The notes under the pieces are model-generated. The model did not search any database and was not told where the DNA came from. It saw nothing but the letters and a program-made list of their open reading frames with translations. DNA of 64,000 bases from the IMG/VR virus record IMGVR_UViG_3300046660_000716, positions 1 to 64,000 of that record; one strand, given 5' to 3'. Each line of letters opens with the position of its first letter. Positions within the stretch are counted from its first letter, which is position 1. The translations under genes and the position numbers were made by a program. This document shows, piece by piece, positions 17,170 through 33,800 of the stretch.

Positions 17170-18000
17170 CTACGCCACGGCCTTTCGGTACGCGTCGCAG
17201 GTCCCGGCCGGCAGGAGGACGATGCCGCGCTTGTAGGCATCGCTGAAGTGGTCCAGGCCATTGGACCCGCCGTTGACGATCCGGCGCGCGTGGCGCAGGT
17301 CGCCCTCGAGCAGCGCGTGCTTGGCCTCGACCACGTGGTCGCTGATGAACGCTGCCAGAATCAGGCCGGCGTACTTGGCGTCGCACGCCAGCGCCGGGTT
17401 GGCGGCCAGGTCCGCGCCGACCACCTTGCCGTACTTGATGTAGTTGTCGCGGCCGGTCAGCTGGACGTAGCCGCCGCCCGGGAAGCTCGCGCCGTCGCCG
17501 AACGCGCCGCCCCGGTTGCCGAGGTCGCGGCGGTTGTCGTACAGGTCGTATGGCTTGCCGCCCGGCGAGGTGTTGTACTTGCTGATGCCTTCCTTGATCG
17601 GCTGGAAGCCCTCGGTCTCGGCGCGGATCGTCGCCAGCGCCATCAGGATGACGGGGGCGTCGGTCAGCTTGAAGTATGCGAGGCCGGCCATCACGCCCGG
17701 CAGGTTCTTCTCGATGTTCGCGCGCGGCGTGACCGGGAACATCTTGGCCACGAGGTCGACGGTGAACAGGGAGGCGTCGTTCGCCACCAGGCCGGCGGAC
17801 AGGCCGAGCTCCGACTGCGTGCGCGGGCCGGCGACGCCGTCCGCGACGAGGCCGTGGGACTTCTGGAACGCCGTGACGGCGGCCGCCGTGCCCGGGCCGA
17901 ACTGGCCGTCCGGCAGGCCGCAGGGGAAGCCGGCGGCGGCCAGCGCGCGCTGCAGGGTCGCTACTTCGTCGCCGGTGCTGCCCAGGGTGAGTTGTGTCAT
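17170..18000 (-). CDS. modular endolysin: PG-binding domain plus glycoside hydrolase family 19
   Basis: DGQFGPGT..AVTAFQ..GLVADGVAGPRT (PG_binding_1); ATIRAET, GGGYVQLTGRDNY, RRIVNGGSNGL (GH19). Confidence 0.9.
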   Translation of the reverse strand: MTQLTLGSTGDEVATLQRALAAAGFPCGLPDGQFGPGTAAAVTAFQKSHGLVADGVAGPRTQSELGLSAGLVANDASLFTVDLVAKMFPVTPRANIEKNLPGVMAGLAYFKLTDAPVILMALATIRAETEGFQPIKEGISKYNTSPGGKPYDLYDNRRDLGNRGGAFGDGASFPGGGYVQLTGRDNYIKYGKVVGADLAANPALACDAKYAGLILAAFISDHVVEAKHALLEGDLRHARRIVNGGSNGLDHFSDAYKRGIVLLPAGTCDAYRKAVA

Positions 18001-18128
18001 GTCGATGAACCTCCATAAAGTTGTCAATCTGATGTTGCAGCAGGGCCGGCCCTCCGCCCCGATCGGCCTTCGTGGCCACAATCGCGGGACGCCAAACAAC
18101 CGAATAGAAAACTCGCCTGGACAACAAA

Positions 18129-20123
18129 ATGCTCACTCCCCCTAACTACGTCGATCTCTTCGATCGTCTGTACCCGGAGCAGCAGCTGACCGGCCTGACG
18201 GACGACGGACAGATCACCGTCGAGGAGCTGAACCAGAGATACGCCATCCAGCGCGCCAACCAGCGCACGATGATGACGGCCCTACAGGGCATCTGGCAGG
18301 CGCTCCCCGACGGCTCCCGCTTCGGCGACTTCGTGGCCCCCTTCTGGGAGGTCGCAGTCAGCCGCGTGTGGAACCTGGACGCGCCGCAGGTCGCGCTGCT
18401 CACCTACCGCCACGGCTTCGACGCCGCCGGCACCGGTCTGGACTTCCCCGAGGAGCGCATCGCGCTCCGCATGAACGACCTGGGCGGCGCCGAGTTCGGC
18501 AACGCCGCGGAGGTCCTGGTCTTCGTGGACGGCCGCCTCGTCGGCCCGTCGGCGTATCTGCTGAGCTCGGTCCAGGGCGGCTTCACCGTCTACCTGAAGA
18601 AGGAGGTCGGCGTCCGCGACGTGCCTATCCGCGTCGTCGCTCTCCGCAAGTTCGGCGAGCGCGGCGTCACGCACGGCGCGTCTCCGATGCTGTCGGCCGG
18701 CGCGGGCGACCCGTCCTCGGGCTACCCGATCACCGTGCAGGACCTGGGCGCATACGGTCCCGTGATGGACATCCGGTACTACCACCTGTTCACCCGGACC
18801 CCCGGAGACCAGTTCTTCCGCCCCGTGGACCTGGCCAAGTTCGTGGCCCGCGCGGACGACGCGACCCCGGCCGCCCTGTTCCTCTACCTGGACCAGGTGG
18901 TGGCGGGCCAGCTCTTCATCGTCGTCAACGTCGCGTCCTTCTGGAAGGCCGAGTACGAGACCCTCGTCACCGACGCCTCCGACGTGTGGCGCGTGAAGCT
19001 GACGTACCCGGACGGCCAGCCCGCCCCGGTGGCGCGCATCGAGGACGTGGACGTGTGGCTGGACGGCCGCCTGCTGCGCCCGAGCGTGGACTTCTGGCTG
19101 TCCTGGAACCGGCGCAACCCGACCAAGCCTCCGCACCTGATCTTCAAGGGCATCCCTCCGGGGCAGCGCCACCTCTTCGTGATCGCGAACGCCCCGTACG
19201 ACCAGGAGCTCGAGCTGACCATCGACGAGCCGGGCACCATCACCGACCCGCGCGCGATCTACGACCTGCCGCGAGCCCAGCACCTGCTGCGCCTGGTGGA
19301 CAACGTGGGCATCGCCTCCACGGGCGGCTACGTCGACAGCGTGGGCGACAGCATCAAGGTCGTCGCCGAGAACATCGGCGTGCACCTGAAGGGTCTGAGC
19401 GACGACCGGGAGCTGAAGTTCCGCGCCCGCTTCGTCTGGCCCCCGGGCCTGCTGGCCGCCGCCCTCCAGGGCTCGGTCGCGCAGACCCCGCTGGAGCGCC
19501 TCGTCGAGATGCTGCAGCCGTCCGGCGGCTTCGGCGTGGACTTCGTGGACAAGTACCGCGGCGAGAACCCGACCCCGGTGCCGCACCTGGACTACCGCCC
19601 CGAGACACGCCCCGGCTACTTCGGCGCGGGCTACTTCTGGACGCGAGACGAGCAGGCCGCGGCCCGCACGGCGTACGTGGCGGTGGACTGCCGCCCAGGC
19701 CAGAACGAGCACTTCGACCCCTGGCGCCAGGGCGGCGCGGACGGCCACGTGCTGTTCGACTGCCGCGTGCAGCCCGAGGTCCTGGTGGACGCCCGCGACG
19801 GCGCCGCCTCGATCTCGTACATCAACTCGCTGGACGCCCGGGAGGGCCACGGCAGCGGGCTGGCCGACTTCCGCTACGACACCGTGGGCCTCGTGCTCGA
19901 CGGCAGGTACGAGGGGGAGACCGGCCTGGTGGACGCCCGCAACGGCGGCTCCGTGAGTCTGCCCCAGCAGTTCTGGGGCCAGGCCGCGGCCCAGACCGGG
20001 AGCATCGACTTCCGCGAGGGCGCAGCCGACCAGCTGTCCGTCCGCCCGACCGACCCGGCCACGTGGCCCGACTGGGCTCGCCTGCACACGACCTCACTCT
20101 CGCTCGACTTCCGCGAGCAATGA
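18129..20123 (+). CDS. putative virion structural protein with C-terminal DxR repeats
   Basis: 664 aa; VFVDGRL and VWLDGRLL beta motifs; start of the fibre gene block. Confidence 0.6.
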   Translation: MLTPPNYVDLFDRLYPEQQLTGLTDDGQITVEELNQRYAIQRANQRTMMTALQGIWQALPDGSRFGDFVAPFWEVAVSRVWNLDAPQVALLTYRHGFDAAGTGLDFPEERIALRMNDLGGAEFGNAAEVLVFVDGRLVGPSAYLLSSVQGGFTVYLKKEVGVRDVPIRVVALRKFGERGVTHGASPMLSAGAGDPSSGYPITVQDLGAYGPVMDIRYYHLFTRTPGDQFFRPVDLAKFVARADDATPAALFLYLDQVVAGQLFIVVNVASFWKAEYETLVTDASDVWRVKLTYPDGQPAPVARIEDVDVWLDGRLLRPSVDFWLSWNRRNPTKPPHLIFKGIPPGQRHLFVIANAPYDQELELTIDEPGTITDPRAIYDLPRAQHLLRLVDNVGIASTGGYVDSVGDSIKVVAENIGVHLKGLSDDRELKFRARFVWPPGLLAAALQGSVAQTPLERLVEMLQPSGGFGVDFVDKYRGENPTPVPHLDYRPETRPGYFGAGYFWTRDEQAAARTAYVAVDCRPGQNEHFDPWRQGGADGHVLFDCRVQPEVLVDARDGAASISYINSLDAREGHGSGLADFRYDTVGLVLDGRYEGETGLVDARNGGSVSLPQQFWGQAAAQTGSIDFREGAADQLSVRPTDPATWPDWARLHTTSLSLDFREQ

Positions 20124-20150
20124 CAAACCCTCACACTACGAAGGCCCAAC

Positions 20151-21095
20151 ATGTCCCGCATCCAGTTTAAACTTTGGGAAGCGCCGCTGGCGACCCTGCA
20201 GCAACCGTACCCGACCGGCCTGGCCGAGGGCGAGGTCGCGATCGCCGCCGAGTCAGGCGCGATCTTCAAGCGTCCTGACAACCAGCCCGTCGCGCCGCTG
20301 GTGCAGGTCGGCCTGCCGGACCTGGGCGCCGGTTTCGCCGTCGATCCGGCCACGGGCAAGATCATCATCTCGGCCGAGTCGCTGGCTCAGGTGCTGACCC
20401 CGGCGTCGATCGGCGACGTGCTGACGCCAGAGGTGCTGGCCGCCGCGCTGACCCCGGAGGCTGTACTGGCAGCCATTCCGGTCGCCGGTCCGAACCAGGC
20501 CGGCTTGGTCAAGCCCGGCAACCAGTTCACGATCGACGCCAACGGCTTTCTGGTCTACAACGGCGGGGGCGGCGGTGCCGGCGGAGCTGCCGACACAGCG
20601 GCCAAGCTGCTGACGGCGCGCGCCATCCAGCTGACCGGCGATGTGACCGGCGCCGTGCAGTTCGACGGTTCGATCGACGTGGCCATTGTCACCCACATCG
20701 ACCAGGCGGCCATCGCCGCCGCCGTGAGCTCGGCCCAGGCCGGCGCCGCGCTGACCGAGGTGTCGTACACCGCGAACACCACGCTGCAGGCTAGCGACAT
20801 CGGCAAGCTGATCAACAACATCGGCGCGACCGCCGCCGTCCAGCTGCAGCTGCCGTCCGCGTCGGCCGTCGGCTTCAAGGGCGCCAGCTTCGAGGTCGCC
20901 AAGGTCGTAGACCAGACGATCGGCTTCAAGGCCGCCGCAGGTCAGTTCATCATGGACTCCTCGGCTGGCGGCACCCTGACCAACTCGACCGGCGGCGAGC
21001 TGCTGTCGACCGTCAAGATCCGCTCGACGAACTGCGGCGGCGGCGTGTACAAGTGGGCGATCGTCGCCGGCTTCGGCACCTGGACCACCGCGTAA
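20151..21095 (+). CDS. tail fibre-like protein
   Basis: ADTAAKLLTARAIQLTGDVTGAVQFDGS fibre motif, AGLVKPG, Gly linker. Confidence 0.7.
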   Translation: MSRIQFKLWEAPLATLQQPYPTGLAEGEVAIAAESGAIFKRPDNQPVAPLVQVGLPDLGAGFAVDPATGKIIISAESLAQVLTPASIGDVLTPEVLAAALTPEAVLAAIPVAGPNQAGLVKPGNQFTIDANGFLVYNGGGGGAGGAADTAAKLLTARAIQLTGDVTGAVQFDGSIDVAIVTHIDQAAIAAAVSSAQAGAALTEVSYTANTTLQASDIGKLINNIGATAAVQLQLPSASAVGFKGASFEVAKVVDQTIGFKAAAGQFIMDSSAGGTLTNSTGGELLSTVKIRSTNCGGGVYKWAIVAGFGTWTTA

Positions 21096-21131
21096 TCGCG
21101 CCCGACAACCCACAACTCTAGGAAGACAGAC

Positions 21132-21593
21132 ATGTCCGATACCGTCCGCCAGTACCTCACGTACATCCCGCAGTACGTCCGCAACTCCGACTTCCCGGGC
21201 GGCGCGTACGTCGACCCGCGCGCCTACTTCGAGCTGAACTTCGGCCCGACCGAGACGCTGAACACCGACGAGCACTTCTCGCGCCACTACAACGGCCAGG
21301 ACTGCCGCACCCTCGCCTGGGTCGACGGTCCAGACGACCACCTGTCCACCGGCAGCACCATCACCGTGGCGCAGATGGCCGCGGACCAGGGTCTGCGCAG
21401 CTTCTGCTCGCAGACGTTGACCATCGAAGAGGCCCTCGAAATCGCCAAGGCGTTCTCGCCTGCCCGCGAGAACACCTTCCCGAACTGGATGCCGGGCGGC
21501 GGCGACATCACCGTCACGTACTCGGAGTGCCGCATTGAGGCCGGTGCGATCGTCCAGGACCGCACCTCGGTGGTGGCTTCGGTGGAGGGCTAA
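21132..21593 (+). CDS. hypothetical protein (possible fibre chaperone)
   Basis: 153 aa, AGGA RBS, follows the fibre gene. Confidence 0.65.
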   Translation: MSDTVRQYLTYIPQYVRNSDFPGGAYVDPRAYFELNFGPTETLNTDEHFSRHYNGQDCRTLAWVDGPDDHLSTGSTITVAQMAADQGLRSFCSQTLTIEEALEIAKAFSPARENTFPNWMPGGGDITVTYSECRIEAGAIVQDRTSVVASVEG

Positions 21594-21597
21594 TCCC

Positions 21598-22848
21598 ATG
21601 ACCACATTCAAAATGGGGCTGGCGCCTTCTGCGGGCGCCAGCGATCAGATCATCCTGACGGGCCAGACGGTGGACGTCTCGATGGTGCCGGGCGATCCGA
21701 CCTACAAGGATGCCGGCGGGACCTGGAAGAAGGCCACGGCCGCCACGCTCGTTCCCGAGGGCGTAGTAGGTCCGTCGGCCAACAGCGTGGTCACCTTCGG
21801 CCGCGCCTCGCTGCTTTCCGGCCTAAACATCGGAAGCATGTACTACCTCGCGGCGACCGGCGGTCTGACGCTCACACAAACCACGGTCAAAATCGGCGTC
21901 GCCTTTAGCGCAACCGAGCTCCTGGTTGACATCGACACAGATGCCACTGCGGGTGCCTATGCCGGCAAGGCAGCATACATCGCTGGCGGCTACAACTCTG
22001 GTCAAACGCCTACGCGCGGCACGACCACTGAGAAGCTGACGTTCGCCACGGAGATCGTCAATTCGCAGGGCGTCACGATCTCCAACGGTCGCGCCAACGG
22101 CATGTCGCACGTGTCGTCCTCGGCGGGCTACGTGGCCGGCGGCTTCGGCGTGGCCAATCTGACGTACGTGGACAAGATGCCGTTCGCCACGGAAGTGTAC
22201 GCGCTGATCGCCGGTCGCAACAGCAACTCGTGCAACAGCAACGGCGCATCTGCATCGAGCTCGTCCGCAGGTTACACGCTGAGCGGCCAGGGCACTGTCG
22301 TCACCGAGTCGACGAACCGCGCGAAAATGCCGTTCTCCACGGAGGTGACAGCGCTGCTGTCAGCAGCTGGCGCACAGGCTCGTCTTTTGGATGCTGGCAC
22401 GCAGTCCAGCACGGCAGCCTATTCCGGCGGCGGCCAGACGGCGGATGGTTCGGGGCAATATTCGAGCATCGATCGCATGGTGTTTTCTACCGAGACCACC
22501 ACGAACAACGCCAGCAGCATGACCCGTTCCGGCTCAGTCCTGTCGGCATGTAGCTCGCTGGTCGCAGGTTACTACCACTCGAATAGTTCTCCGAACAGCA
22601 CGCTGATGAACAAGTTGACGTTTGCAACGGACACAGCTGCAACCGTGAACGTGGGAACCGCCGCATTGACGGCCACGTCGTCGGGCGGTGCGACAGCATC
22701 AAGCACTGCTGGCTACATCATCATGGGTAGCAGCACCGGCGGAACCATCTTGAACAAACTGGCCTTCGTAAGTGACACCGTCGCCTTGAGCACCGCGCAG
22801 CTCGTGCTGGGCCGCGTATCGCCGTTCATGTTTGCCAACCTGTCGTAG
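21598..22848 (+). CDS. Kelch-like beta-propeller virion/fibre protein, paralog 1
   Basis: N-terminal GLxxGxxYYL...KIGVAFSATELLVDI domain; six GYxxGG...(D/E)K(L/M)xFxT(E/D) repeats. Confidence 0.75.
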   Translation: MTTFKMGLAPSAGASDQIILTGQTVDVSMVPGDPTYKDAGGTWKKATAATLVPEGVVGPSANSVVTFGRASLLSGLNIGSMYYLAATGGLTLTQTTVKIGVAFSATELLVDIDTDATAGAYAGKAAYIAGGYNSGQTPTRGTTTEKLTFATEIVNSQGVTISNGRANGMSHVSSSAGYVAGGFGVANLTYVDKMPFATEVYALIAGRNSNSCNSNGASASSSSAGYTLSGQGTVVTESTNRAKMPFSTEVTALLSAAGAQARLLDAGTQSSTAAYSGGGQTADGSGQYSSIDRMVFSTETTTNNASSMTRSGSVLSACSSLVAGYYHSNSSPNSTLMNKLTFATDTAATVNVGTAALTATSSGGATASSTAGYIIMGSSTGGTILNKLAFVSDTVALSTAQLVLGRVSPFMFANLS

Positions 22849-22936
22849 CACTTCGGCCCCTCCGGAGCTTCCAACCGGAGGGATCGAACGTACCATTGTA
22901 GCGCCCCACAAAAACACACAGCAGAAAGATCCGGAA

Positions 22937-23683
22937 ATGACCACCCAAGACAGCAAGCAGCTCTCCATCGTCACCGTCGAAGACACGGCCAGCGTCCGCT
23001 ACGCCGATCTGCTGGCCCTGGTGCCGTTCGGCCAGTCGAAGTACCAGACCGAGCAGTTCCTGGTGAACCAGCACCGCACGCCCCACCGCCAGCTGCGCCA
23101 GATCCTGCTGCAGTACGACCAGCTGTGCTACACGCTGATCGGCAGCCAGAACAAGCAGGCCCAGACCGCGCTGGACCTGGACGACAAGCAGAACCAGATC
23201 GACCGCCTGGAGCACAAGATGGCAAAAGGCGACTTCGACAAATTCGACACGCGCGACGCGGAGATCAAGATCAGCAAACTCCGGCTGGAGATCGAAGAGA
23301 TCAACGTCGGCCGCCAGCAAGGCGCCAAGATGCTGGATGACGCGTTTGCGGAGAAAAAAACCTTCGAGAACGCGCTCGCCAAGGTCATTCCCGAGGTGCA
23401 GGCCCTCGAAGCCCAGGGCATCACCTTCGACGTGGCCGAGAAGGGCTACTGGTCGGAGCGATTCCTGGAGGATGCGCGTCTGACGCTGTTCGGCATCAAG
23501 ACCGGTCACCAGGTCGACAAGGAAATCATGCGCGCGATCACGCAGATGGAGCCGGAGGGCCGCGCCGCATTCATGCAGGGCCTCGGCATGGACCCACAGC
23601 TCCTGGAGCAGAGCGGTCTTCTCGACAAGCCGGTGCTGAAGCTCAGCGCACCATCGGCGCCTGAAGCGCCGCGACTCACCTAA
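22937..23683 (+). CDS. hypothetical coiled-coil protein
   Basis: 248 aa helical protein between propeller genes. Confidence 0.7.
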   Translation: MTTQDSKQLSIVTVEDTASVRYADLLALVPFGQSKYQTEQFLVNQHRTPHRQLRQILLQYDQLCYTLIGSQNKQAQTALDLDDKQNQIDRLEHKMAKGDFDKFDTRDAEIKISKLRLEIEEINVGRQQGAKMLDDAFAEKKTFENALAKVIPEVQALEAQGITFDVAEKGYWSERFLEDARLTLFGIKTGHQVDKEIMRAITQMEPEGRAAFMQGLGMDPQLLEQSGLLDKPVLKLSAPSAPEAPRLT

Positions 23684-23738
23684 CCAACACCCACGGTCCG
23701 CTCGTTTCCACGAGCGGGCCACAACCTGGAGTCCAAGA

Positions 23739-24974
23739 ATGACGACCTACACCAATGGCCCATCGGCTGCTGCCGCCAGCGGCGACGCTTTGATTCTGAC
23801 AGGCCAGAACACCGAAGGCAGCGGCCAGCCTGTCTACATGGACAACGCGACCGGCATCTGGAAGTTGGCCACCTCGTCCACACCGCGTCCGAGCGGCTTT
23901 TCCGCCGGCTCCGGAGCCGGGTCGAATGTCTACCTCGGTGGTCGCGTTCCTGGCTTCAGCGCCCTGTCGGTCGGCGCATCCTACTGGCTGCTGGACGGCG
24001 GCGGCATCGGCCTTTCGCCTGGCTCCATCCAGACCCGCATCGGCACCGCGATCAGTGCGACCGAGCTGTTGCTGGACATCGAGTTCTTCAGCTCGAATCC
24101 GACTGGCGTGGCGGGCTACACCGCACAGGGCGGCCCGTCGAACGCCAGTGGTTACCTGGACAAGATGCCTTTCTCCACCGAAGTGAACGCGCGTATTGGC
24201 ACCCAAGCCACCGCAGGCCGCTACTATGCCAGCGCGGTTTCCTCGTCGGTGGCCGGCTACGTTGTCGACGGCGGACAGGACTACAAGTCGTCCATCGACA
24301 AGCTGGCGTTCTCCACGGACGTGAGCGCCTTGATCGCCAGTCAGGCTGCGCCCGGCCACTATGCCGCGTTTTCTGGATGCATGAGTCCTACGGCCGGCTA
24401 CATTGCCGGCGGCTGGAATCCAAATATCTACACCTCCATCAAGGTTCTGACCTTCAGCAATGACGTGGTCAGCACGCTGAACGGTGCTCTGATCTCGCAG
24501 AATGCCACGTGGGGTGCCGGCTTTGCGAACTCGGCAAATGCATGGTTTGCTGGCGGTTTCGACCTGAATACAGGCCAGGGCATCTCGTACATCGTCCAGC
24601 TTCCATTCGCCACAAACACCCCCAGCCTCCTCGGTTCGACGCTGGTGTCGCAGGGTGGCCGCCAGGGTCCGATCGCTTATTCGTCTACCACTGGTTACAC
24701 CGGCGGCGGCGCCTCTGCCGTGGGAACTCGGGTTGACAAGTTTGTCTATGCGACCCTTGTTACCAGTGCTATCGGCCCAGGTGTGCCTCAACCGCTCACC
24801 GGTGGTCCGGCGTCCTTCGGCAACAGCCTGACTGGATACGCCGCGGGCGGACAGCAAGCCTCGTCGCTCTACAAGATGAGCTTCGCCACCGAGGGCACCT
24901 GGAGTATCCTCGGTGCACAAGTCACATCCACGTCGACCGTCGACAATACCGGCTTCGCGAACAACGGCGGCTAA
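23739..24974 (+). CDS. Kelch-like beta-propeller virion/fibre protein, paralog 2
   Basis: same N-terminal domain (RIGTAISATELLLDI) and repeats. Confidence 0.75.
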   Translation: MTTYTNGPSAAAASGDALILTGQNTEGSGQPVYMDNATGIWKLATSSTPRPSGFSAGSGAGSNVYLGGRVPGFSALSVGASYWLLDGGGIGLSPGSIQTRIGTAISATELLLDIEFFSSNPTGVAGYTAQGGPSNASGYLDKMPFSTEVNARIGTQATAGRYYASAVSSSVAGYVVDGGQDYKSSIDKLAFSTDVSALIASQAAPGHYAAFSGCMSPTAGYIAGGWNPNIYTSIKVLTFSNDVVSTLNGALISQNATWGAGFANSANAWFAGGFDLNTGQGISYIVQLPFATNTPSLLGSTLVSQGGRQGPIAYSSTTGYTGGGASAVGTRVDKFVYATLVTSAIGPGVPQPLTGGPASFGNSLTGYAAGGQQASSLYKMSFATEGTWSILGAQVTSTSTVDNTGFANNGG

Positions 24975-24986
24975 CCTAGGATCGTC

Positions 24987-26048
24987 ATGCACATCATCAT
25001 TCACTGCGATTCCATCCCGTTCGGCATGCGCTCCCTCGAGACGCACCCGCTGGGCGGGACCGAGTCGTCCGTCATCTCCCTGTCGCGTGAGCTCGCGCTG
25101 CTTGGCCACCAGGTCACGGTCGTGGCCAAGTGCCCGACGTACGAGTTCGCCGACGGTGTCGAGGTGATCCCCGCCGCCTCCGTCGACATGAAGCGCCTCT
25201 CCGGCGACGTCTTCGTGTCCGTGCGCGACGCGGGCGCCGTCCTGGCAATCGATCGGTCGAACTTCGGCAAAGTCGTCTTCTGGAGCCACGACGTCATGCA
25301 GCACCCGGCGTCGGAGCACCTGCTGAACGACACAGGCGGAGCGGTCTCGGAGCGCATCGACGCCATCGTGCTCGTGTCAGACTTCGTGCAGAGCCAGCTG
25401 CGCATCCAGCGCCAGCCGCATCTGCGCGACAAGCTGCACGTCATCCGCAACGGCGTGGACGACCGGTTCCTGGTCGAGCGCCCCGAGGGCGACGGGCTGC
25501 TGCACTGCACCTACCACTCCATGCCGTACCGCGGCCTGGTGTATCTGCTCGACGCGTGGCAGGCCATCCAGGCCGCCGTGCCGGAGGCCCGCCTTCACCT
25601 GCGCACCGGCAACCAGATCTACGGCGGGGGCGACGCCGAGAACCAGTGGCTCTGGAACCGGGCGAAGCGCGTGGGCGCCGAGCTGCATGGCCCTGTGTGT
25701 CAGAGGGATCTCATGGCCTCGCTGGCGGGCATGGACCTACACCTCTACCCGACCGACTTCGTCGAGTCCAGCTGCACGGCGACCATGATGTCCCTCGCCT
25801 CGGGCTGCGCAGTCGTGGCCACCGACCTGGGCGCGCTGAACGAGCAAGTGGACGGGACCAACGGCAAGCTCATCGACGGCCACCCTGGAACAAAGGGATA
25901 TGCGCAGGAGTTCGTCGCCACGACCGTCTCGATCCTGGCGGACCGTGCGCGCCTCCGGGCGATGCAGGACAAGGCCCGCACCTCCATGGCGGGACAGACG
26001 TGGAAACGGCGCGCCCAGCAGTGGGTCGCCATGATCGAAGGACTCTGA
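24987..26048 (+). CDS. GT-B fold glycosyltransferase (family 4-like)
   Basis: LGGTESSV, GHQVTV, WSHD, VIRNGVD, ESSC..MMSLASG.AVVATDLGALNE. Confidence 0.88.
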   Translation: MHIIIHCDSIPFGMRSLETHPLGGTESSVISLSRELALLGHQVTVVAKCPTYEFADGVEVIPAASVDMKRLSGDVFVSVRDAGAVLAIDRSNFGKVVFWSHDVMQHPASEHLLNDTGGAVSERIDAIVLVSDFVQSQLRIQRQPHLRDKLHVIRNGVDDRFLVERPEGDGLLHCTYHSMPYRGLVYLLDAWQAIQAAVPEARLHLRTGNQIYGGGDAENQWLWNRAKRVGAELHGPVCQRDLMASLAGMDLHLYPTDFVESSCTATMMSLASGCAVVATDLGALNEQVDGTNGKLIDGHPGTKGYAQEFVATTVSILADRARLRAMQDKARTSMAGQTWKRRAQQWVAMIEGL

Positions 26049-26049
26049 T

Positions 26050-27273
26050 ATGACGATTTACAAACTGTGGAACGGCGGCGGTTCCGCCGCCTCTGGCGAC
26101 GCCGTTGTGCTTTCTGGCGTCAGCTACCAAGGCACGCCGGTGCAGGGCCAGCCGATGTACAAGATCGCAGGCAGCACCTGGGCCATCGCCACCAAGGACA
26201 CACCGCGCCCGTCCGGCGTGTACTCCGGCTCCGGCACCATCACGCTCTTGGGACATGTGACGGGGTTGAGCGGACTTACGCGCGGTGCCACGTACTATAT
26301 GGCCGACGCGGGCGGTCTCTCGGCTGTGCCCGGGGCCGCTGTGGTGAAGATGGGTGTAGCCATCAGCGCTACCGATTTTCAGGTAGACATCAATATTTCC
26401 ACTCCGTACGTGTCCACAGGCCAAGCGATGTATGCAACGTCGGGCGCGGCAGCCACCGGTAATTCGACTTACATCGATCGCCTGCAGTTCTCCACCGAGG
26501 TCGTGACGGGGCTGGCCGGCGGCGTCGGCCTTGTGGCGGCGTACGACACGAACGGCTTCGCCTCGCTGTCAGCGGGCTACCAGGTCGGCGGGGGCAACAA
26601 CACGTCCACGACGAACATCGCGAAGATGCCCTTCGCGACGGAAGTTCTGGCCATGGCAACAGTGAAGAATTTCACAGACACTCAGCTGGCCTCGTCGATG
26701 GCTTCCTCCACCACGGGGTACACCTGCGGCGGTCAGAGCGCGGCCAGCGGCACCTACGATTACCTCGCCAAGCTGGTCTTCTCAACGGACACGCCGAGCT
26801 CCGCGACGGCGCGTATGGCCGTCGGCCGTTACCAGGCGGCGGGCTTCTCCTCGTCGTCGGCCGGATATGCCGTGGGCGGTAACTTCGGTAGCTCCAGCAT
26901 CGAGAAGATGGCATTTTCCAACGAGGTGTCAGTCCTGCTTTCCGGCAACCTGCCGGCGACGCGGTACTACTCGACCGGGTTTGCGTCCCCCACCGCCGGC
27001 TACACGAGCGGTGGCGTGAGCCAGCTGCTCATCAACAAGCTCACGTTCGCGTCGGACACCAACGCCAACACGGGTGCGTCTCTCAGCCAGACGCGCTACT
27101 ACGAAATGTCATCAGCCTCGGGGCTCATCGGATACCTGGCGGGCGGTTACGCTTCCAGTGTACCCACCACGCGGATCGATAGATTGACCTTTGCGACCGA
27201 TGCACAATCGATCGTCAGCGCCAACCTGTCCGTTGCACGCTACTCTGGCTGCGCATTCGCCAACATGTCGTAG
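26050..27273 (+). CDS. Kelch-like beta-propeller virion/fibre protein, paralog 3
   Basis: same N-terminal domain (KMGVAISATDFQVDI) and repeats; ends FANMS like paralog 1 (FANLS). Confidence 0.75.
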   Translation: MTIYKLWNGGGSAASGDAVVLSGVSYQGTPVQGQPMYKIAGSTWAIATKDTPRPSGVYSGSGTITLLGHVTGLSGLTRGATYYMADAGGLSAVPGAAVVKMGVAISATDFQVDINISTPYVSTGQAMYATSGAAATGNSTYIDRLQFSTEVVTGLAGGVGLVAAYDTNGFASLSAGYQVGGGNNTSTTNIAKMPFATEVLAMATVKNFTDTQLASSMASSTTGYTCGGQSAASGTYDYLAKLVFSTDTPSSATARMAVGRYQAAGFSSSSAGYAVGGNFGSSSIEKMAFSNEVSVLLSGNLPATRYYSTGFASPTAGYTSGGVSQLLINKLTFASDTNANTGASLSQTRYYEMSSASGLIGYLAGGYASSVPTTRIDRLTFATDAQSIVSANLSVARYSGCAFANMS

Positions 27274-27350
27274 CAGCCGCAGCTCCAAAGGATGCCGAAC
27301 GGTCCATTGCGGCCGTTCGGCCCCTCCTTTCAACGAATCACGGACACGCC

Positions 27351-28055
27351 ATGATCCCTCTCTACTTCGCTACCCCTTTCCGCCACGCGGCCAACCCACA
27401 CCTCGTCGGCTTCAACACGATCGACCAGAAGACACGTATCTTCGCACCAATCCGCGGCGCCGTGGCTGAGCTGCCCGTGGACGTCGCGCGCAACGCCCTG
27501 GTGGAGGACTTTCTGGCAAAGACGCAGGGCGTGGACGACGCGTGGCTGCTCTTCATGGACGACGACGTGCTCTTCCCGACCGACGCGCTGGACCTGTGGC
27601 TGGAGGCGCTGCGCGCCAATCCGACGTCGCCTGTCTTCTTCGGTGAGTACCCGCTGAAGAAGCGCACTTTCGAGCCGGCGTGCGTGTTCGATGCCGCCGG
27701 CGGCATCGTGACCGTGGCCACGGGCTGCATGTTCGTGCACCGCAGCGTCTTCGTGCACCTGCGCACCGACCGCGCCACCGCCTTCGGCCTGCAGCCGTAC
27801 GACGGTCGCTGGTTCATCTGCTCGGCTGAGAACCCGCTGGGTGGAGAGGATGCGTACTTCACGAAGACCTTGCTGGACGTCGGCATCGTGCCGGTGAAGA
27901 TCCCGGGCCTGGAGTGCGTCCACGTGGAGTTCAGTCGTAAAGCTGCATTCGGCCATCCGGACGTCGTCAAGGACGGCAAGATCCGAAAAGAAAAAGCTTA
28001 CATCTACGCGATCGAGCCCGACGCGCCGCTCTACGAACACATCGTTGAGCAATAA
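27351..28055 (+). CDS. GT-A fold glycosyltransferase (family 2-like)
   Basis: ARNALV, WLLFMDDD (DxD), TGCMFVHRSVF, GEDAYF. Confidence 0.8.
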   Translation: MIPLYFATPFRHAANPHLVGFNTIDQKTRIFAPIRGAVAELPVDVARNALVEDFLAKTQGVDDAWLLFMDDDVLFPTDALDLWLEALRANPTSPVFFGEYPLKKRTFEPACVFDAAGGIVTVATGCMFVHRSVFVHLRTDRATAFGLQPYDGRWFICSAENPLGGEDAYFTKTLLDVGIVPVKIPGLECVHVEFSRKAAFGHPDVVKDGKIRKEKAYIYAIEPDAPLYEHIVEQ

Positions 28056-28067
28056 CCTGCAGCATAT

Positions 28068-28097
28068 GAGGTCCATGCCGTCCGCGGCATGGACCTC
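28068..28097. repeat. CCATGCC/GGCATGG hairpin family, copy 3
   Basis: GAGGTCCATGCCG-TCCG-CGGCATGGACCTC. Confidence 0.75.
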
Positions 28098-28153
28098 CTC
28101 TCACCGCCGAGCCTCCGCGGACCCCACGAACCAACGACGAACGGAAGAAGAAC

Positions 28154-30043
28154 ATGACGAATCCCGGCGTGACCGCGCGCACAAAAATGTCCCTACGCGC
28201 GGGCCTCGGCATCAAGCCGGTAGCGGCGCTGCCGCAGGTAGAGGACGGAGACGTCACCCTGTACAACGGCCGCATCTGGATCGGCCGCATCTCGTCCGGC
28301 CTCAAGGTGGCGGTCCCCGCCGGCCCCGAGACCCCGCAGTACCCCCACTTCCAGGCCGTCGCCTCGACGCTGTGGCAGATCAGTCACGGCCTGAACACCG
28401 CCGGGACGCCGACCATCGCCGTGCGCGATGGCGCCGGCAATCCGCTGACGCCGATGGCCGTCACCGTGGTGTCCGACAACCAGACGAACCTGACGTTCAG
28501 CGCGGCCCAGTCCGGCAGCGCCTTCCTGCTGTTCGGCAACTCCATCTCGACGGACTCGGTGCACACCAGCAAGGTGCTGGTCGGCAGCCGCGGCATCACC
28601 GACTCGGGCAGCGCCCTGCAGGTCGACGGCGTGGACGTCTCGCTCCTGGGCCACGCGCACGCCTTCTCGACCCTGACCGGCAAGCCGACGACTCTGGGCG
28701 GCTACGGCATCACCGACGCGCAGAGCCTGATCGTCGCCGGGAGCGCCGCGCAGTACTACCGCGGTGACAAGACGTTCCAGACGCTGGACAAGGCAGCGGT
28801 CGGCCTGGGTCTGGTGGAGAACACCGCGCTGTCGACGTGGGCCGGCTCGGCCAGCCTGGTAACGGCGGGCAACCTCACCGCCGCGGCGCTGACCGTCTCC
28901 GGCTCCACCGTCTTCACAGGTCCGGTGACATTCAACGGAACGACGACCACGGTCAACGCGACCACTGTGACGCTGGCGGATCCGGTGATGACCCTGGGTG
29001 GCACCGCTGCGCTCACCGTGGACGACGGCAAGGACCGCGGCATCGAGTACCGATGGTACAACGGCGCGGCCAAGACGGGCTTCTTCGGCTTCGACCGTTC
29101 GACCGGTCGCATGACCTTCATCCCGGACGCCGTGAATGCCGGCGAGGTGTTCTCCGGCGCGGTGGGCGTGGTTGAGGCGAACCTGCTGGGGAACGTGACG
29201 GGCGCCGTGACCGGCAACGCCGACACCGCCACGAAGCTCAGCTCGGTCCGCTCCCTGTCGATCACGGGCGACGCCGCCTGGACGACGAACTTCGACGGCT
29301 CGGCCAACGCGACGGGCGCGCTGACTCTGGCCAACACTGCCGTGGCCGCGGGCGCGTACGGCTCCGGCACCCAGATCCCGACCTTCACGGTCGACGGCAA
29401 GGGCCGGCTCGTGGCCGCGGGGTCTGTCGCCGTGACGCCTCCCGCCTTCGCAGCGGTGACGGGCAAGCCTACCACGCTGGGAGGCTACGGCATCACGGAC
29501 GGCGCGCTGCAGGCCGACCTTCTGGCCCACACGGGCGGCGCCGACCCGCACCCGCAGTACTACAACCAGGTCCGAGGCGACGCCCGGTACTCGCAGCTGC
29601 TGAACGTCGTCGGGAAGAACGCCGTCAATACGGCCAGCACGAGCACCACCCTCGCCAACGCGACGGGCCTCTCGATCCAGCTCGCTGCGAACACGCTCTA
29701 CCGCGTCAGCATGATGGTGCGATTCTCTTCGACGAATGCCGGTACTGGCGTCAAGCTCGGCGTGACCGCACCGGCGTCCGCGACGGTGGCCCTGGCGGCG
29801 ACCATCCCGCGCGCCGCCGACGGCACGGGCTCGGCGTTCTACGGGCAGATCACGTCCTCTGGCGACTCCGTCCTGAGCAACGGCGTGGAGGCGGCCAACA
29901 CGACGTACATGGCGACCATCCTCGGTACCGTCCAGACGGGCGCCACCGCCGGTCCGCTCCAGGTGCAGCTCGCCACAGAGGTCAACAGCGTCTCGGTCTC
30001 CGTGGTGGCCGGCTCGGTCATCGTGGCCGACATCATTCCATAA
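28154..30043 (+). CDS. tail fibre protein
   Basis: two TGKPTTLGGYGITD repeats, ADTATKL...FDGS, VDGKGRL, DPHPQY fibre motifs. Confidence 0.85.
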   Translation: MTNPGVTARTKMSLRAGLGIKPVAALPQVEDGDVTLYNGRIWIGRISSGLKVAVPAGPETPQYPHFQAVASTLWQISHGLNTAGTPTIAVRDGAGNPLTPMAVTVVSDNQTNLTFSAAQSGSAFLLFGNSISTDSVHTSKVLVGSRGITDSGSALQVDGVDVSLLGHAHAFSTLTGKPTTLGGYGITDAQSLIVAGSAAQYYRGDKTFQTLDKAAVGLGLVENTALSTWAGSASLVTAGNLTAAALTVSGSTVFTGPVTFNGTTTTVNATTVTLADPVMTLGGTAALTVDDGKDRGIEYRWYNGAAKTGFFGFDRSTGRMTFIPDAVNAGEVFSGAVGVVEANLLGNVTGAVTGNADTATKLSSVRSLSITGDAAWTTNFDGSANATGALTLANTAVAAGAYGSGTQIPTFTVDGKGRLVAAGSVAVTPPAFAAVTGKPTTLGGYGITDGALQADLLAHTGGADPHPQYYNQVRGDARYSQLLNVVGKNAVNTASTSTTLANATGLSIQLAANTLYRVSMMVRFSSTNAGTGVKLGVTAPASATVALAATIPRAADGTGSAFYGQITSSGDSVLSNGVEAANTTYMATILGTVQTGATAGPLQVQLATEVNSVSVSVVAGSVIVADIIP

Positions 30044-30055
30044 GGAAACAACACT

Positions 30056-30472
30056 ATGACCATCCAGAAAAGTGTCATCGACGACCTCATTGCTTCCATC
30101 GAATCGGCGGCCGACGACGCCCGGGTCCGGATCGTAGGGGACCCCGTGCGGGTCGTCGAGTACCAGTCGGCCGAGCTCGACGCCAAGGCGTACGTGGCGG
30201 CCAACTACGAGGGCGACGTGCCGGTGTACATCCAGTGCTGGGCCGACGCGAAGCACTGGACCCCGAGGGAGGCGTGCGACGACATCCTGGGCGCCGCGAC
30301 GGCCTGGCGCGCCGCGCTGATCAACATCCGCGTGGCTCGGCTGCATGGCAAGCAGGGCGTCCGCGACGCCGCCCTCATCGAGGACGACGAGGTCGCCTTC
30401 CAGACGGCGCGCGCCGCCACCGACACCGCCATCGCGCAGCTCAAGTACATCCTGTCCCTCACAATCGCATAG
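30056..30472 (+). CDS. putative tail fibre assembly protein
   Basis: small helical ORF directly after the fibre gene. Confidence 0.55.
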   Translation: MTIQKSVIDDLIASIESAADDARVRIVGDPVRVVEYQSAELDAKAYVAANYEGDVPVYIQCWADAKHWTPREACDDILGAATAWRAALINIRVARLHGKQGVRDAALIEDDEVAFQTARAATDTAIAQLKYILSLTIA

Positions 30473-30481
30473 GAGAACCAC

Positions 30482-30961
30482 ATGAAGGTCGCATTCTACA
30501 AGGACAACTCGCACGTCTTCAACGCCCTGGTGTCCTGGTGGACGCGCGGCCCGTACTCCCACTGCGAGCTGATCATCGGCTACACCGGCGACGGTAAGGC
30601 CATCTGCTACTCTTCGTCCTTCCGCGACGGCGGCGTCCGCCTGAAGATCGTCGACCTGATCCCTGAGCACTGGGACATCGTCGACATCGGCGGCACCGAG
30701 AGCGACGCCATCGCGGCGGTGGCGTGGTTCGCCGAGCGCGTCGGCGCGAAGTACGACGTGATGGGCCTGGTGGGATGTGTCTTCCGCTCCGTGGCCGACG
30801 ACCGCGACAAGTACTACTGCTCGGAGGCCGTCGCCGCAGCGGTCGGCTTCCCCGAGTCGTGGCGCATGGACCCGAACACGCTCTACTCGGTCTTCACGCG
30901 CGCCGCGTCTTTGCCGGAAAAGGTTGGGGCCCAACAGCCAGTTGTCGTCCAACCAACCTGA
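30482..30961 (+). CDS. permuted papain-like (NlpC/P60, YiiX/YaeF-type) protein
   Basis: YSHCEL (His) precedes KYD...YYCSE (Cys). Confidence 0.75.
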   Translation: MKVAFYKDNSHVFNALVSWWTRGPYSHCELIIGYTGDGKAICYSSSFRDGGVRLKIVDLIPEHWDIVDIGGTESDAIAAVAWFAERVGAKYDVMGLVGCVFRSVADDRDKYYCSEAVAAAVGFPESWRMDPNTLYSVFTRAASLPEKVGAQQPVVVQPT

Positions 30962-32861: not shown

Positions 32862-33179
32862 TCATTGGACCACGGTAGGGGTCCAGCGCGGGGGACTAGG
32901 GGGCTGTGGCGGGTCAGGCTGCCCCGCAGGCGCCACCTCTGGCGCGTAGCCGTTCGCGCGGTTGATTTCGTCGATCGCCACGTAGGCTTCGACGGCCTGA
33001 GCGGCCATCATCTGCGGGCCGGAGGGGGTCATGACCGTCACCAGCTGGGGCGCGGTCATCTTTGCGATCGCCTCCAGCGCCTGGCAGGCGCGCCCGATGG
33101 CGAACTGCAGCCGTCGCAGCTCGTCCATGGGAGTCAGGACGCTCAGCGACGGCGGAAGGACGTACTGCTCGTTGCTCAT
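32862..33179 (-). CDS. hypothetical protein
   Basis: 105 aa, ATGA overlap. Confidence 0.65.
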   Translation of the reverse strand: MSNEQYVLPPSLSVLTPMDELRRLQFAIGRACQALEAIAKMTAPQLVTVMTPSGPQMMAAQAVEAYVAIDEINRANGYAPEVAPAGQPDPPQPPSPPRWTPTVVQ

Positions 33180-33790: not shown

Positions 33791-33800
33791 ACTAGCCCTT

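What the first reader, a model, noticed from the sequence alone, without database searches (positions are those of the whole stretch)
21598..28055. Three Ser/Thr-rich Kelch-like propeller paralogs interleaved with two glycosyltransferases: possible virion glycosylation cassette
Seen: propeller1 - coiled-coil - propeller2 - GT4-like - propeller3 - GT2-like, embedded between tail fibre genes. The propellers share an N-terminal attachment-like domain, diverge in the blades, are very S/T/G/A-rich and appear by eye to have less GC-biased third codon positions than flanking genes. Established: some phages glycosylate virion proteins using GTs located among structural genes. Inference: these GTs modify virion appendages, or host surface glycans, rather than DNA.
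Basis: partly seen in the sequence, partly recalled or inferred. Interest (0 to 1): 0.6.

Follow-up and report, generated by a model that had tools for sequence, protein, structure and literature searches.

The report
Kelch-propeller tail fibres with two glycosyltransferases
A rhizosphere jumbo phage carries three related propeller-shaped fibre proteins, most likely for host recognition, interleaved with two sugar-adding enzymes; the enzymes may decorate the fibres themselves, but that is unproven and each part has precedents.

Summary
Window 21598-28055 encodes three full-length paralogs (P1, P2, P3; 32-36% identity). Each has a ~120-aa N-terminal domain found only in these three genes of the genome, followed by a six-bladed Kelch-type propeller (TM 0.85-0.91 to Kelch domains). 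They are interleaved with a GT-B/GT4-type glycosyltransferase and a 234-aa DXD protein. That protein matches no Pfam, PHROG or NCBIfam family but looks like a divergent GT-A enzyme. GC3 of the propellers is 0.75-0.80, against 0.905 expected from their composition.

The block lies in the tail-fibre module of a 259-kb jumbo phage distantly related to phiR1-37 and AR9. phiR1-37 has Kelch repeats inside a virion-proven tail-fibre protein in the same neighbourhood.

The two enzymes form a conserved, mobile pair. Relatives place it beside tail or receptor-binding genes (three loci, one of them a distant cyanophage with Kelch proteins, a sulfotransferase and oxygenases) or inside a ribonucleotide-reductase operon (two loci).

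No T4-type DNA-glucosylation pathway and no membrane Gtr-type parts are present. Virion-fibre glycosylation is the best single reading (about 0.4). Host-glycan modification cannot be excluded. Kelch fibre proteins and phage virion glycoproteins are both already known, so this is a new variant, not a new kind.

The parts
17170..18099 (-). Endolysin (peptidoglycan-binding domain plus lysozyme/chitinase-like domain). It marks one border of the fibre module.
   Evidence: phrog_181 endolysin, E 2.3e-30, plus 15 further lysis or related PHROG families. phiR1-37 has the same endolysin / fibre module / Dda-helicase neighbourhood.
18129..20123 (+). 664-aa ORF, first gene of the co-oriented block. Function unknown.
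   Evidence: GC3 0.955. No Pfam, PHROG or phage tblastn match.
20151..21095 (+). 314-aa fibre-type protein.
   Evidence: Short fibre-repeat matches to several PHROG tail-fibre families and to phrog_3018.
21132..21593 (+). 153-aa ORF of unknown function, 4 nt upstream of P1.
   Evidence: No family match. Spacing.
21598..22848 (+). P1: N-terminal anchor-like domain (~1-117) plus six-bladed Kelch-type propeller.
   Evidence: Paralog of P3 (E 1e-42). phrog_19111, E 2.6e-12. GC3 0.775.
22937..23683 (+). 248-aa charged helical protein, a conserved member of tail-fibre modules. Coiled coil not verified.
   Evidence: phrog_1409, E 7e-17. Homologs in 94 cyanomyovirus records, lying inside their tail-fibre gene block. 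Crude heptad test negative.
23739..24974 (+). P2: N-terminal anchor-like domain plus six-bladed Kelch-type propeller.
   Evidence: Paralog of P3 (E 2e-35). GC3 0.752.
24987..26048 (+). Soluble GT-B glycosyltransferase of GT4 type. Its stop codon lies 1 nt before the P3 start.
   Evidence: PF13692 at 41.4 bits and PF13439 at 40.4 bits, both above cut-off. phrog_2170. It is the only Glyco_trans_1_4 (PF13692) match in the genome. Orthologs at 45-46% identity in L006 and L007. No TM segment and GC3 0.912.
26050..27273 (+). P3: N-terminal anchor-like domain plus six-bladed Kelch-type propeller (the modelled paralog).
   Evidence: AlphaFold model with pLDDT about 90 over residues 125-407. Foldseek TMt 0.85-0.91 to Kelch domains. 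2591 family representatives at E <= 1e-3. phrog_19111, E 8.6e-18.
27351..28055 (+). 234-aa soluble DXD protein, a probable divergent GT-A glycosyltransferase and partner of the GT4 enzyme.
   Evidence: Invariant D70-D72 after a hydrophobic strand in 5 homologs. Weak PF00535 match at the DXD region, 12 bits. Atlas model neighbours carry GT2 or Anp1 (TM 0.69-0.79). The L014 homolog is fused to a GT2 domain and touches the Fringe cut-off. It sits adjacent to the GT4 ortholog in L006 and L007.
28154..30043 (+). 629-aa fibre protein.
   Evidence: phrog_697 at 4.5e-36, phrog_3018 at 3.7e-27 and several tail-fibre PHROGs. Fibre modules shared with 316 phage records.
30056..30472 (+). 138-aa protein, a possible fibre assembly factor.
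   Evidence: phrog_8983 at 2e-28 and phrog_8258 'tail fiber assembly protein' at 1.3e-5.

Best explanation
Window 18.1-30.5 kb is the tail-fibre (host-recognition) module of a 259-kb jumbo phage with direct terminal repeats, distantly related to phiR1-37, AR9 and PBS1.

P1, P2 and P3 are three paralogous virion fibre components. A shared ~120-aa N-terminal domain docks each one to the same kind of site on the particle. A diverged six-bladed Kelch-type propeller is the exposed, ligand-binding head. Together they give the phage several alternative receptor specificities. This part is inferred from fold, paralog pattern and synteny, at about 0.75.

The GT-B/GT4-type enzyme and the 234-aa DXD (GT-A-like) enzyme are a conserved two-enzyme module that moves between phage genomes. 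Both are soluble and cytoplasmic. They sit in the same tightly spaced, co-oriented block as the fibre genes, so they are probably made late together with them. The most likely activity is stepwise addition of a short O-linked glycan, from host nucleotide sugars, to newly made fibre proteins. One enzyme would initiate and the other extend, and the S/T-rich propellers are the prime candidates. This part is inference only, at about 0.4.
For: Shown:
- Paralogy and the domain split.
- Kelch fold.
- Weak Kelch Pfam hits in family members.

Structural role by analogy and synteny:
- phiR1-37, the closest isolate by RNA polymerase beta' (33% identity), carries Kelch repeats in g294, annotated as a putative tail fibre and phage structural protein, and in g295. 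These lie in a module bordered by an endolysin and a Dda-like helicase, as here.
- CBB has three Kelch genes interleaved with structural genes, and CBB_552 was found in virions by mass spectrometry (PMC5259590).
- BFVD neighbours include 'virion structural proteins' of PhiPA3, Noxifer and Phabio.
- An N-domain plus Kelch protein lies two genes upstream of a PG_binding_1 (endolysin-like) gene in L011, following large unannotated genes.
- The 248-aa neighbour is a tail-fibre-module protein in Kyanoviridae. It lies near a distant propeller relative, S-RIM12 gp198 (hhalign E 1.5e-5).

Link between the enzymes and fibres:
- Gaps of 12 nt and 1 nt join P2, GT4 and P3. There is no excess of terminators.
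- The GT-A homolog lies next to tail tube, sheath and baseplate genes plus an NDP-sugar epimerase in L014. It lies next to an Mtd receptor-binding protein with a DGR reverse transcriptase in L015.
- In cyanomyovirus AG-345-L05, triple-Kelch genes are interleaved with a DXD protein, a GT4 enzyme (E 1e-13 to this one), a sulfotransferase and 2OG oxygenases.

Precedents:
- Mycobacteriophage virion glycans (cited in PMC12619734).
- Two virion glycoproteins and two glycosyltransferases in jumbo phage XacN1 (PMC5852040).
- An earlier prediction that co-encoded oxygenases and sulfotransferases modify tail-collar proteins (PMC2938197).
Against: - No direct evidence of any glycan.
- The enzyme pair lies between nrdA and thioredoxin/nrdB in L006 and L007, with no fibre gene in view on those contigs, which are only about 3 kb long.
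- phiR1-37, CBB and S-SKS1 have Kelch fibre proteins but no detectable GT-B (Glyco_trans_1_4) enzyme, so the propellers do not need the enzymes.
- GT4 has normal GC3 (0.912) while the propellers do not (0.75-0.80). This argues for separate histories.
- S/T richness is built into the blade consensus and is matched by the neighbouring fibre (S+T 0.21).
- The second Glu of the GT4 EX7E motif is an invariant Met (sequence; the motif itself is from my own knowledge).
- The Atlas model of the N-domain resembles small viral proteins that include Phage_cement_2 head-decoration proteins (TM 0.74). A capsid location is therefore not excluded.
Confidence: 0.4

Rival explanations
1. The two glycosyltransferases alter host envelope glycans (LPS, capsule or EPS precursors built on the cytoplasmic face) rather than phage proteins. 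The effect could be to mask the receptor that the fibres recognise, so that progeny are not lost on infected cells or debris and superinfection is blocked. The propellers are ordinary receptor-binding proteins and are not substrates.
For: - GT4-type and GT-A enzymes are the standard builders of surface polysaccharides. The best NCBIfam and PDB hits are generic GT4 enzymes.
- From my own knowledge, not tested here: receptor-modifying genes sit next to tailspike genes in P22-like phages. The tail or RBP neighbourhoods in L014, L015 and L008 fit this reading as well.
- The sulfotransferase and NDP-sugar epimerase in relatives are also typical polysaccharide enzymes.
- The cyanophage literature reads such genes as cell-surface modifiers (PMC12801897).
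Against: - No membrane or flippase parts of the Gtr type, and no TM segment.
- The phage appears lytic, and the genes sit in what looks like a late structural block, which leaves little time to remodel the envelope.
- Only two enzymes are present and no NDP-sugar genes are found in the genome.
Confidence: 0.25
2. P1-P3 are capsid decoration proteins, not tail fibres. The N-terminal domain is a cement-like anchor on the head, and the Kelch propeller is displayed on the capsid surface for adhesion to glycans, in the manner of Hoc.
For: - The Atlas model of residues 3-122 aligns at TM 0.74 with small viral proteins, including a cluster where 57% of members carry PF09956 Phage_cement_2. The language-model search also ends at that family (0.85).
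- Both flanking fibre-like genes hit phrog_3018, labelled head decoration protein.
Against: - No sequence match to PF09956, even at E 10, nor to any PHROG for the N-domain alone.
- TM values on about 110 residues between two predicted models are weak evidence, as the tool itself notes.
- My own model of the N-domain has pLDDT below 50.
- Synteny with the phiR1-37 tail-fibre module, the Kyanoviridae fibre-module neighbour and a fibre-assembly-like gene downstream all point to the tail.
Confidence: 0.15
3. The enzyme pair makes a soluble glycoside, such as a low-molecular-weight thiol or another cofactor or solute. It has no functional link to the fibres and simply landed in a recombination-prone fibre region.
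For: - In L006 and L007 the pair lies between nrdA and thioredoxin/nrdB.
- The top NCBIfam hits are MshA and BshA, the glycosyltransferases of mycothiol and bacillithiol synthesis.
- The codon signature of GT4 differs from that of the propellers.
Against: - The MshA and BshA scores (31 and 19 bits) are far below their cut-offs of 462 and 274 bits, so they show only general GT4 likeness.
- In this genome the reductase lies 165 kb away.
- Three other contexts are tail or RBP modules.
- From my own knowledge: the gap between nrdA and nrdB is a common insertion site in large phages.
Confidence: 0.07
4. The glycosyltransferases glycosylate phage DNA bases to evade restriction.
For: - Phage glycosyltransferases classically do this (reviewed in PMC12619734).
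- The nucleotide-metabolism context in L006 and L007.
Against: - No thymidylate-synthase or hydroxymethylase homolog in the complete genome, with positive controls working.
- No Tet/JBP match either, but that search had no working control.
- No match to T4 alpha- or beta-glucosyltransferase families in the Pfam scan.
- The genes lie in a structural block rather than among replication genes.
Confidence: 0.05

Closest known systems
Kelch-repeat virion proteins of jumbo phages: phiR1-37 g294/g295; Pectobacterium phage CBB_550/552/554; phiKZ-like 'virion structural proteins'
   Same: - Six-bladed Kelch-type propellers encoded in structural or tail-fibre modules of phages above 200 kb.
- Several paralogs per genome, interleaved with other genes.
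- Virion presence shown for CBB_552 and annotated for phiR1-37 g294.
   Different: - Those proteins match Pfam Kelch models, whereas P1-P3 do not. P1-P3 belong to a separate large family (phrog_19111; 2591 representatives).
- In phiR1-37 the repeats are embedded in 1300-aa fibres, and in CBB they are propeller-only proteins of about 280 aa.
- Here a private 120-aa N-domain precedes the propeller.
- None of those loci has a GT-B enzyme of the Glyco_trans_1_4 type.
Tandem-propeller fibre-module proteins of marine cyanophages: S-SKS1 SWZG_00001; AG-345-L05 955-aa and 968-aa proteins; metagenomic arrays such as L020
   Same: - Same sequence family (tblastn 5e-9 and 2e-5).
- Same blade motif.
- Arrays of paralogs.
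- Neighbours are fibre genes and modification enzymes: GT4, a DXD protein, a sulfotransferase and 2OG oxygenases.
   Different: - Most relatives carry two to five or more propellers per polypeptide (600-2800 aa) and lack the N-domain of P1-P3.
- The hosts are low-GC marine cyanobacteria.
Virion glycosylation in mycobacteriophages (Che8, Corndog, Myrna) and glycoproteins of Xanthomonas jumbo phage XacN1
   Same: Phage-encoded soluble glycosyltransferases and glycosylated virion proteins (cited; XacN1).
   Different: - The known targets are the C-termini of capsid and tail-tube subunits, not fibres.
- Che8-type enzyme genes lie near the 3' end of the genome.
- No sequence relationship to those enzymes was found or tested here.
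- No glycan has been shown for this phage.
Five-bladed propeller 'platform' of receptor-binding proteins in Staphylococcus and Brochothrix siphophages
   Same: A beta-propeller that carries the receptor-binding sites of a tail-tip protein (PMC12917162).
   Different: - Five blades, a different family, and Gram-positive hosts.
- The propeller sits between a coiled-coil stem and tower domains.
Cytoplasmic O-glycosylation of serine-rich bacterial adhesins by a GT4 initiator plus GT-A extenders (own knowledge, not tested here)
   Same: A working analogy only: a GT-B/GT4 enzyme plus a small GT-A enzyme acting in the cytoplasm on S/T-rich surface proteins before assembly.
   Different: No homology was tested, the acceptor architecture is different, and those are bacterial systems, not phage systems.

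Membership tests
Kelch-type six-bladed beta-propeller | Six blades of four antiparallel strands closing into a ring | tested here: met
   P3 model residues 125-407 have pLDDT about 90 and about 24 strands. Foldseek against PDB gives TMt 0.85-0.91 and rmsd 1.9-2.6 A to KLHL3/12/17, Keap1 and designed six-blade Kelch proteins.
Kelch-type six-bladed beta-propeller | Repeat of about 44-56 aa with a Gly-Gly doublet and a conserved aromatic residue | tested here: met
   Six [GA]Y..GG and K[LM]xF[ST]T motifs spaced 44-50 aa apart. Autocorrelation peaks at lags 44-50 and about 94-100.
Kelch-type six-bladed beta-propeller | Sequence match to Pfam Kelch models (Kelch_1-6) | tested here: not met
   No Pfam hit for P1, P2 or P3 at E <= 0.1. 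Only weak Kelch hits, mostly below cut-off, appear in family members P0150, P0015, P0020, P0004 and the L008 proteins.
PHROG 19111 (phage protein family, unknown function) | Significant match to the family profile | tested here: met
   P1 at 2.6e-12 and P3 at 8.6e-18. P2 is below threshold but is a full-length paralog.
GT-B glycosyltransferase of GT4 type | Pfam Glyco_trans_1_4/Glycos_transf_1 C-domain and Glyco_transf_4 N-domain above gathering score | tested here: met
   PF13692 at 41.4 bits (cut-off 27) and PF13439 at 40.4 bits (cut-off 28.5). Confirmed in the genome scan.
GT-B glycosyltransferase of GT4 type | EX7E motif in the C-terminal domain (the motif is from my own knowledge) | tested here: not met
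   The first Glu (E260) is invariant. The position of the second Glu is an invariant Met (M268) in the window protein and both orthologs. The effect on activity is unknown.
GT-A glycosyltransferase (GT2, GT31/Fringe or Anp1-like) | Family profile match above cut-off | tested here: not met
   None in Pfam, PHROG or NCBIfam. PF00535 reaches only 12 bits against a cut-off of 23.3, at the DXD region. The PDB profile search found nothing at E < 0.1.
GT-A glycosyltransferase (GT2, GT31/Fringe or Anp1-like) | DXD motif after a hydrophobic strand | tested here: met
   D70-D71-D72 are invariant in 5 homologs of 51-100% identity and are preceded by W-[LF]-x-F-[MI].
GT-A glycosyltransferase (GT2, GT31/Fringe or Anp1-like) | GT-A Rossmann-like fold | tested here: inconclusive
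   - The Atlas model (pTM 0.79) aligns at TM 0.69-0.79 with viral clusters carrying GT2 or Anp1 and with fusions to methyltransferases.
- My own model is poor (pLDDT 55) and gives no match.
- The L014 homolog hits Fringe at 21.2 bits (cut-off 21) on the homologous part and is fused to a GT2 domain.
T4-type DNA glucosylation system | dCMP or dUMP hydroxymethylase (thymidylate-synthase family) in the genome | tested here: not met
   PF00303 is absent from the complete 259-kb record, and the controls were positive in 10 of 14 genomes.
Gtr-type seroconversion system | Membrane-embedded GtrA, GtrB and type-specific Gtr proteins | tested here: not met
   No TM-like segment in GT4 (maximum KD19 of 1.37). 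The 234-aa protein is borderline at 1.74. No membrane gene lies in the block.
Phage_cement_2 head-decoration proteins (PF09956) | Profile match, or shared fold of the N-domain | tested here: inconclusive
   No profile match at E <= 10. The only sign is Atlas model similarity at TM 0.74 and a feature score of 0.85.
Phage virion glycosylation (mycobacteriophage type) | Glycan covalently attached to virion proteins, dependent on phage glycosyltransferases | not testable with these tools
   This needs mass spectrometry or glycostaining. Only the gene content is seen here.

The most novel reading that the evidence does not exclude
The GT4 plus DXD pair is a dedicated, horizontally mobile system that O-glycosylates phage receptor-binding proteins. 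It would be one branch of a wider, unrecognised class of fibre-modification cassettes (glycosyltransferase, sulfotransferase, 2OG oxygenase) that travel with a very large Kelch-like phage fibre family (2,591 50%-identity clusters matched at E <= 0.001). If so, this would be the first tail-fibre glycosylation system, and it would make fibre chemistry, not only fibre sequence, a determinant of host range or of resistance to host proteases and antibodies.
Probability: 0.3. Interest if true: 0.7.

Novelty: new variant of a known kind. Interest (0 to 1): 0.45.

Why it matters
If the enzymes do glycosylate the propellers, host recognition by phages would have a post-translational layer that sequence-based receptor-binding predictions miss. 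It would also extend virion glycosylation from mycobacteriophage capsids and tail tubes to the fibres of a phage of a probable Gram-negative soil host (the host is not identified).

Independently of that, the work defines three things:
- A large uncharacterised family of Kelch-type fibre proteins (phrog_19111), together with a private anchor domain.
- A 234-aa enzyme family with no Pfam model.
- A conserved pairing of that enzyme with a GT4 enzyme.

These give annotators and experimenters concrete targets. If the enzymes turn out to act on host glycans, the locus is an ordinary fibre module with accessory genes.

Tried and rejected
Searches that found nothing useful:
- Near-identity DNA search of the phage collection: no match.
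- tblastn of the 234-aa and 664-aa proteins against phages: no match.
- Word-index search with P3: only 5 weak hits. With its N-domain alone: only itself.
- Locus scans of viral contigs failed with P3, with the GT4 alignment and with the 24-sequence Kelch alignment. Because of this, a systematic count of how often glycosyltransferases neighbour this family could not be made. Context rests on a handful of loci.

Structure:
- The 234-aa model was too poor (pLDDT 55). Foldseek and VIA-align gave no meaningful match (best Z 3.0). The two longest alignments were to GT-A enzymes, but at Z 2.2-2.4, which is noise level.
- The N-domain was not confidently folded in my model.
No verdict.

Family scans:
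- PF09956 and PHROG scans of the N-domain alone were negative.
- A PADLOC scan of all six proteins was negative, so a defence-system reading was dropped.
- The Tet/JBP search had no working control and is not counted.

Other:
- The 'coiled-coil' label was not reproduced by a crude heptad test, which is not a validated predictor.
The only holders are DNA contigs of rhizosphere metagenomes, one of which is probably the source sample.
- Genetic code 4 was used only for locus L014. There, in-frame stops fall exactly on two invariant Trp positions of the family, and the code turns fragmented ORFs into long contiguous genes.
- The Freeman et al. 2023 paper is not held in the library, so it is cited only through papers that quote it.

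Full report
**What is there.** The window is the first 64 kb of a 259,338-bp virus record with direct terminal repeats, about 65% G+C. From 18129 to 30961, twelve genes lie on the + strand with gaps of 1-98 nt. The finding's coordinates cover six of them:
- P1, 21598-22848
- a 248-aa protein, 22937-23683
- P2, 23739-24974
- a 353-aa enzyme, 24987-26048
- P3, 26050-27273
- a 234-aa protein, 27351-28055

**The propellers.**
- P1, P2 and P3 align over their whole length at 32-36% identity (E 2e-35 to 1e-42).
- The first ~117 residues are more conserved (41-46%) than the rest (28-34%). That N-domain is found nowhere else in the genome.
- With an alignment of 24 family members, AlphaFold2 folds P3 residues 125-407 at pLDDT about 90. 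The N-domain stays below 50.
- The folded part matches six-bladed Kelch propellers in the PDB at TM 0.85-0.91 and rmsd about 2 A.
- Six blade motifs recur every 44-50 residues.
- Pfam Kelch models do not hit P1-P3 themselves. They give weak hits in relatives. 'Kelch-type fold' is therefore shown, while membership of the Pfam Kelch families is not.
- The family is large. An exhaustive HMMER search found 2,591 50%-identity clusters at E <= 1e-3, most of 600-1650 aa with two to five or more propellers in tandem. PHROGs holds it as phrog_19111, function unknown.

**Composition.**
- S+T is 22-27% and G+A is 25-28%.
- GC3 is 0.754-0.798, against a genome median of 0.905. It is depressed in every amino-acid class. 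The value expected from composition is 0.905-0.909, and the neighbouring fibres of similar composition are normal.
- The GT4 gene is normal (0.912) and the 234-aa gene is intermediate (0.850).
- The propellers therefore look more recently acquired, or keep exchanging with lower-GC relatives. They do not share the enzymes' history.

**The enzymes.**
- The 353-aa protein passes the Pfam cut-offs for Glyco_trans_1_4 and Glyco_transf_4. It is the only Glyco_trans_1_4 (PF13692) match in the genome.
- By inspection, the second Glu of its EX7E motif is an invariant Met (the motif is from my own knowledge).
- The 234-aa protein has no hit in Pfam, PHROGs, NCBIfam or PDB sequences.
- Four metagenomic homologs (51-66% identity) share an invariant DDD after a hydrophobic strand.
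- PF00535 touches that spot at 12 bits.
- The ESM Atlas model (pTM 0.79) resembles viral clusters carrying GT2 or Anp1, some of them fused to methyltransferases.
- In locus L014 a 48%-identical homolog reaches the Fringe cut-off and is fused to a GT2 domain.
- My own model was too poor to search with.
- I therefore call it a probable divergent GT-A enzyme, not a GT2 member.
- Both proteins lack TM segments.

**The enzymes are a pair, and the pair moves.** It appears in these contexts:
- L006 and L007: orthologs of both (45-54% identity) are adjacent, lying between nrdA and thioredoxin/nrdB.
- L014 (27% G+C, TGA read as Trp as shown by stops at invariant Trp positions): the GT-A homolog is followed by an NDP-sugar epimerase/dehydratase, then tail tube, sheath and baseplate genes.
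- L015: it follows an Mtd receptor-binding protein, a DGR reverse transcriptase and a weakly lectin-like ORF.
- Marine cyanomyovirus AG-345-L05: a fibre with an S74 chaperone domain and a 2491-aa protein are followed by a triple-Kelch protein, a DUF6445 (2OG-oxygenase-like) protein, a sulfotransferase, a second triple-Kelch protein, a 219-aa DXD protein, a GT4 enzyme (E 1e-13 to the window's) and another oxygenase-like protein.
- This genome: the ribonucleotide reductase lies 165 kb away.

**Where on the virion?**
- RNA polymerase beta' places the phage nearest phiR1-37 (33%) and the AR9/PBS1 group.
- In phiR1-37 the tail-fibre module (g294-g300) is bordered by an endolysin and a Dda-like helicase. 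Kelch repeats lie in g294, annotated as a putative tail fibre and phage structural protein, and in g295.
- The window has the same frame: endolysin at 17170-18099, Dda-like helicase at 34168-35679, and a fibre-assembly-like gene at 30056-30472.
- The 248-aa protein has homologs in 94 cyanomyovirus records, inside their tail-fibre blocks. There it lies near S-RIM12 gp198, a distant propeller relative.
- A protein with the same N-domain plus Kelch repeats lies two genes upstream of a PG_binding_1 (endolysin-like) gene in L011, after large unannotated genes.
- CBB has three Kelch genes interleaved with structural genes, one of them proven in virions.
- Against this, the Atlas model of the N-domain resembles small viral proteins that include Phage_cement_2 decoration proteins. 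No sequence search supports that.
- I put the tail at about 0.75 and the capsid at about 0.15.

**What do the enzymes act on?**
- DNA is unlikely. There is no hydroxymethylase homolog with working controls, no T4-type glucosyltransferase family, and the genes sit in a structural block.
- Gtr-type seroconversion parts are absent.
- Three tail or receptor-binding contexts against two reductase contexts favour a link with the adsorption apparatus. That link fits both modification of the fibres and modification of the receptor glycan.
- Late co-location with the substrates fits fibre glycosylation best. So do the recurrence of other protein-modifying enzyme types beside Kelch fibre genes, the earlier prediction of modified tail-collar proteins (PMC2938197), and the glycoproteins seen in jumbo phage XacN1 (PMC5852040). 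I set fibre glycosylation at about 0.4.
- Counter-evidence: Kelch fibre proteins exist without a detectable GT-B (Glyco_trans_1_4) enzyme, the codon histories differ, and S/T richness is a structural property of the blades.

**Novelty.** Kelch proteins in jumbo-phage virions and phage virion glycoproteins are both described. New here are:
- the particular family with its private anchor domain;
- the unmodelled 234-aa enzyme family and its conserved GT4 partner;
- the recurring placement of modification enzymes among Kelch fibre genes.

This makes it a new variant of a known kind, of moderate interest, and testable by simple co-expression and mass spectrometry.

**Limits.** Context evidence rests on six loci, several of them short. 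No expression data exist: the only holders are rhizosphere DNA runs. The trimer test could not be run.

Noticed in passing
window 3006-4415 (+), and the whole record: The phage encodes a multisubunit-type RNA polymerase beta' fragment. The closest matches are phiR1-37 (33%) and AR9/PBS1/Staphylococcus S6-type jumbo phages, a group known for uracil-containing DNA (own knowledge). The genome has no thymidylate-synthase family gene. Whether its DNA carries dU was not examined.
   Followed up: partly
L014:1-11302: A 27% G+C viral contig that reads TGA as Trp. In-frame stops fall on two invariant Trp positions of the 234-aa family, and table 4 merges fragmented ORFs into long genes for tail sheath, tube and baseplate.
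   Followed up: partly
L015:2-3902: A diversity-generating retroelement (Mtd second domain plus reverse transcriptase) lies directly upstream of a homolog of the 234-aa enzyme, with a weakly agglutinin-like ORF between them.
   Followed up: no
L020:338-12130: Four tandem genes of 963-986 aa lie back to back on one metagenomic contig. One is a ~970-aa (three-propeller-sized) family member (P0018). The other three were not checked.
   Followed up: no
L008:14725-16163 and 21605-22090: In marine cyanomyovirus AG-345-L05, a sulfotransferase and two DUF6445/2OG-oxygenase-like genes sit among the Kelch fibre genes. S-SKS1, S-RIM12 and P-RSM1 also have 2OG-Fe(II) oxygenases in or next to their fibre modules.
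   Followed up: partly
window 24987-26048 (+), residues 260-268: In the GT4 enzyme the second Glu of the usual EX7E motif is a Met. This Met is invariant in the two orthologs of 45-46% identity.
   Followed up: no
window 30482-30961 (+): A 159-aa protein gives a strong match to phrog_1128 (E 2.8e-42), labelled enoyl-CoA hydratase/carnitine racemase-like, but has no Pfam hit. It is the last gene of the co-oriented block.
   Followed up: no
G000:C1 102442-105528, 111025-112578, 171937-173091, 189850-190827, 253960-256389; window 33176-33829, 38086-38673, 53700-54626: Other genes with GC3 of 0.72-0.78, in the same low tail as the propellers. They are possibly further recent acquisitions.
   Followed up: no
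window 1-64000: No tRNA genes in the window. The only sequencing runs that hold the stretch are rhizosphere metagenomes, one of them probably the source.
   Followed up: no
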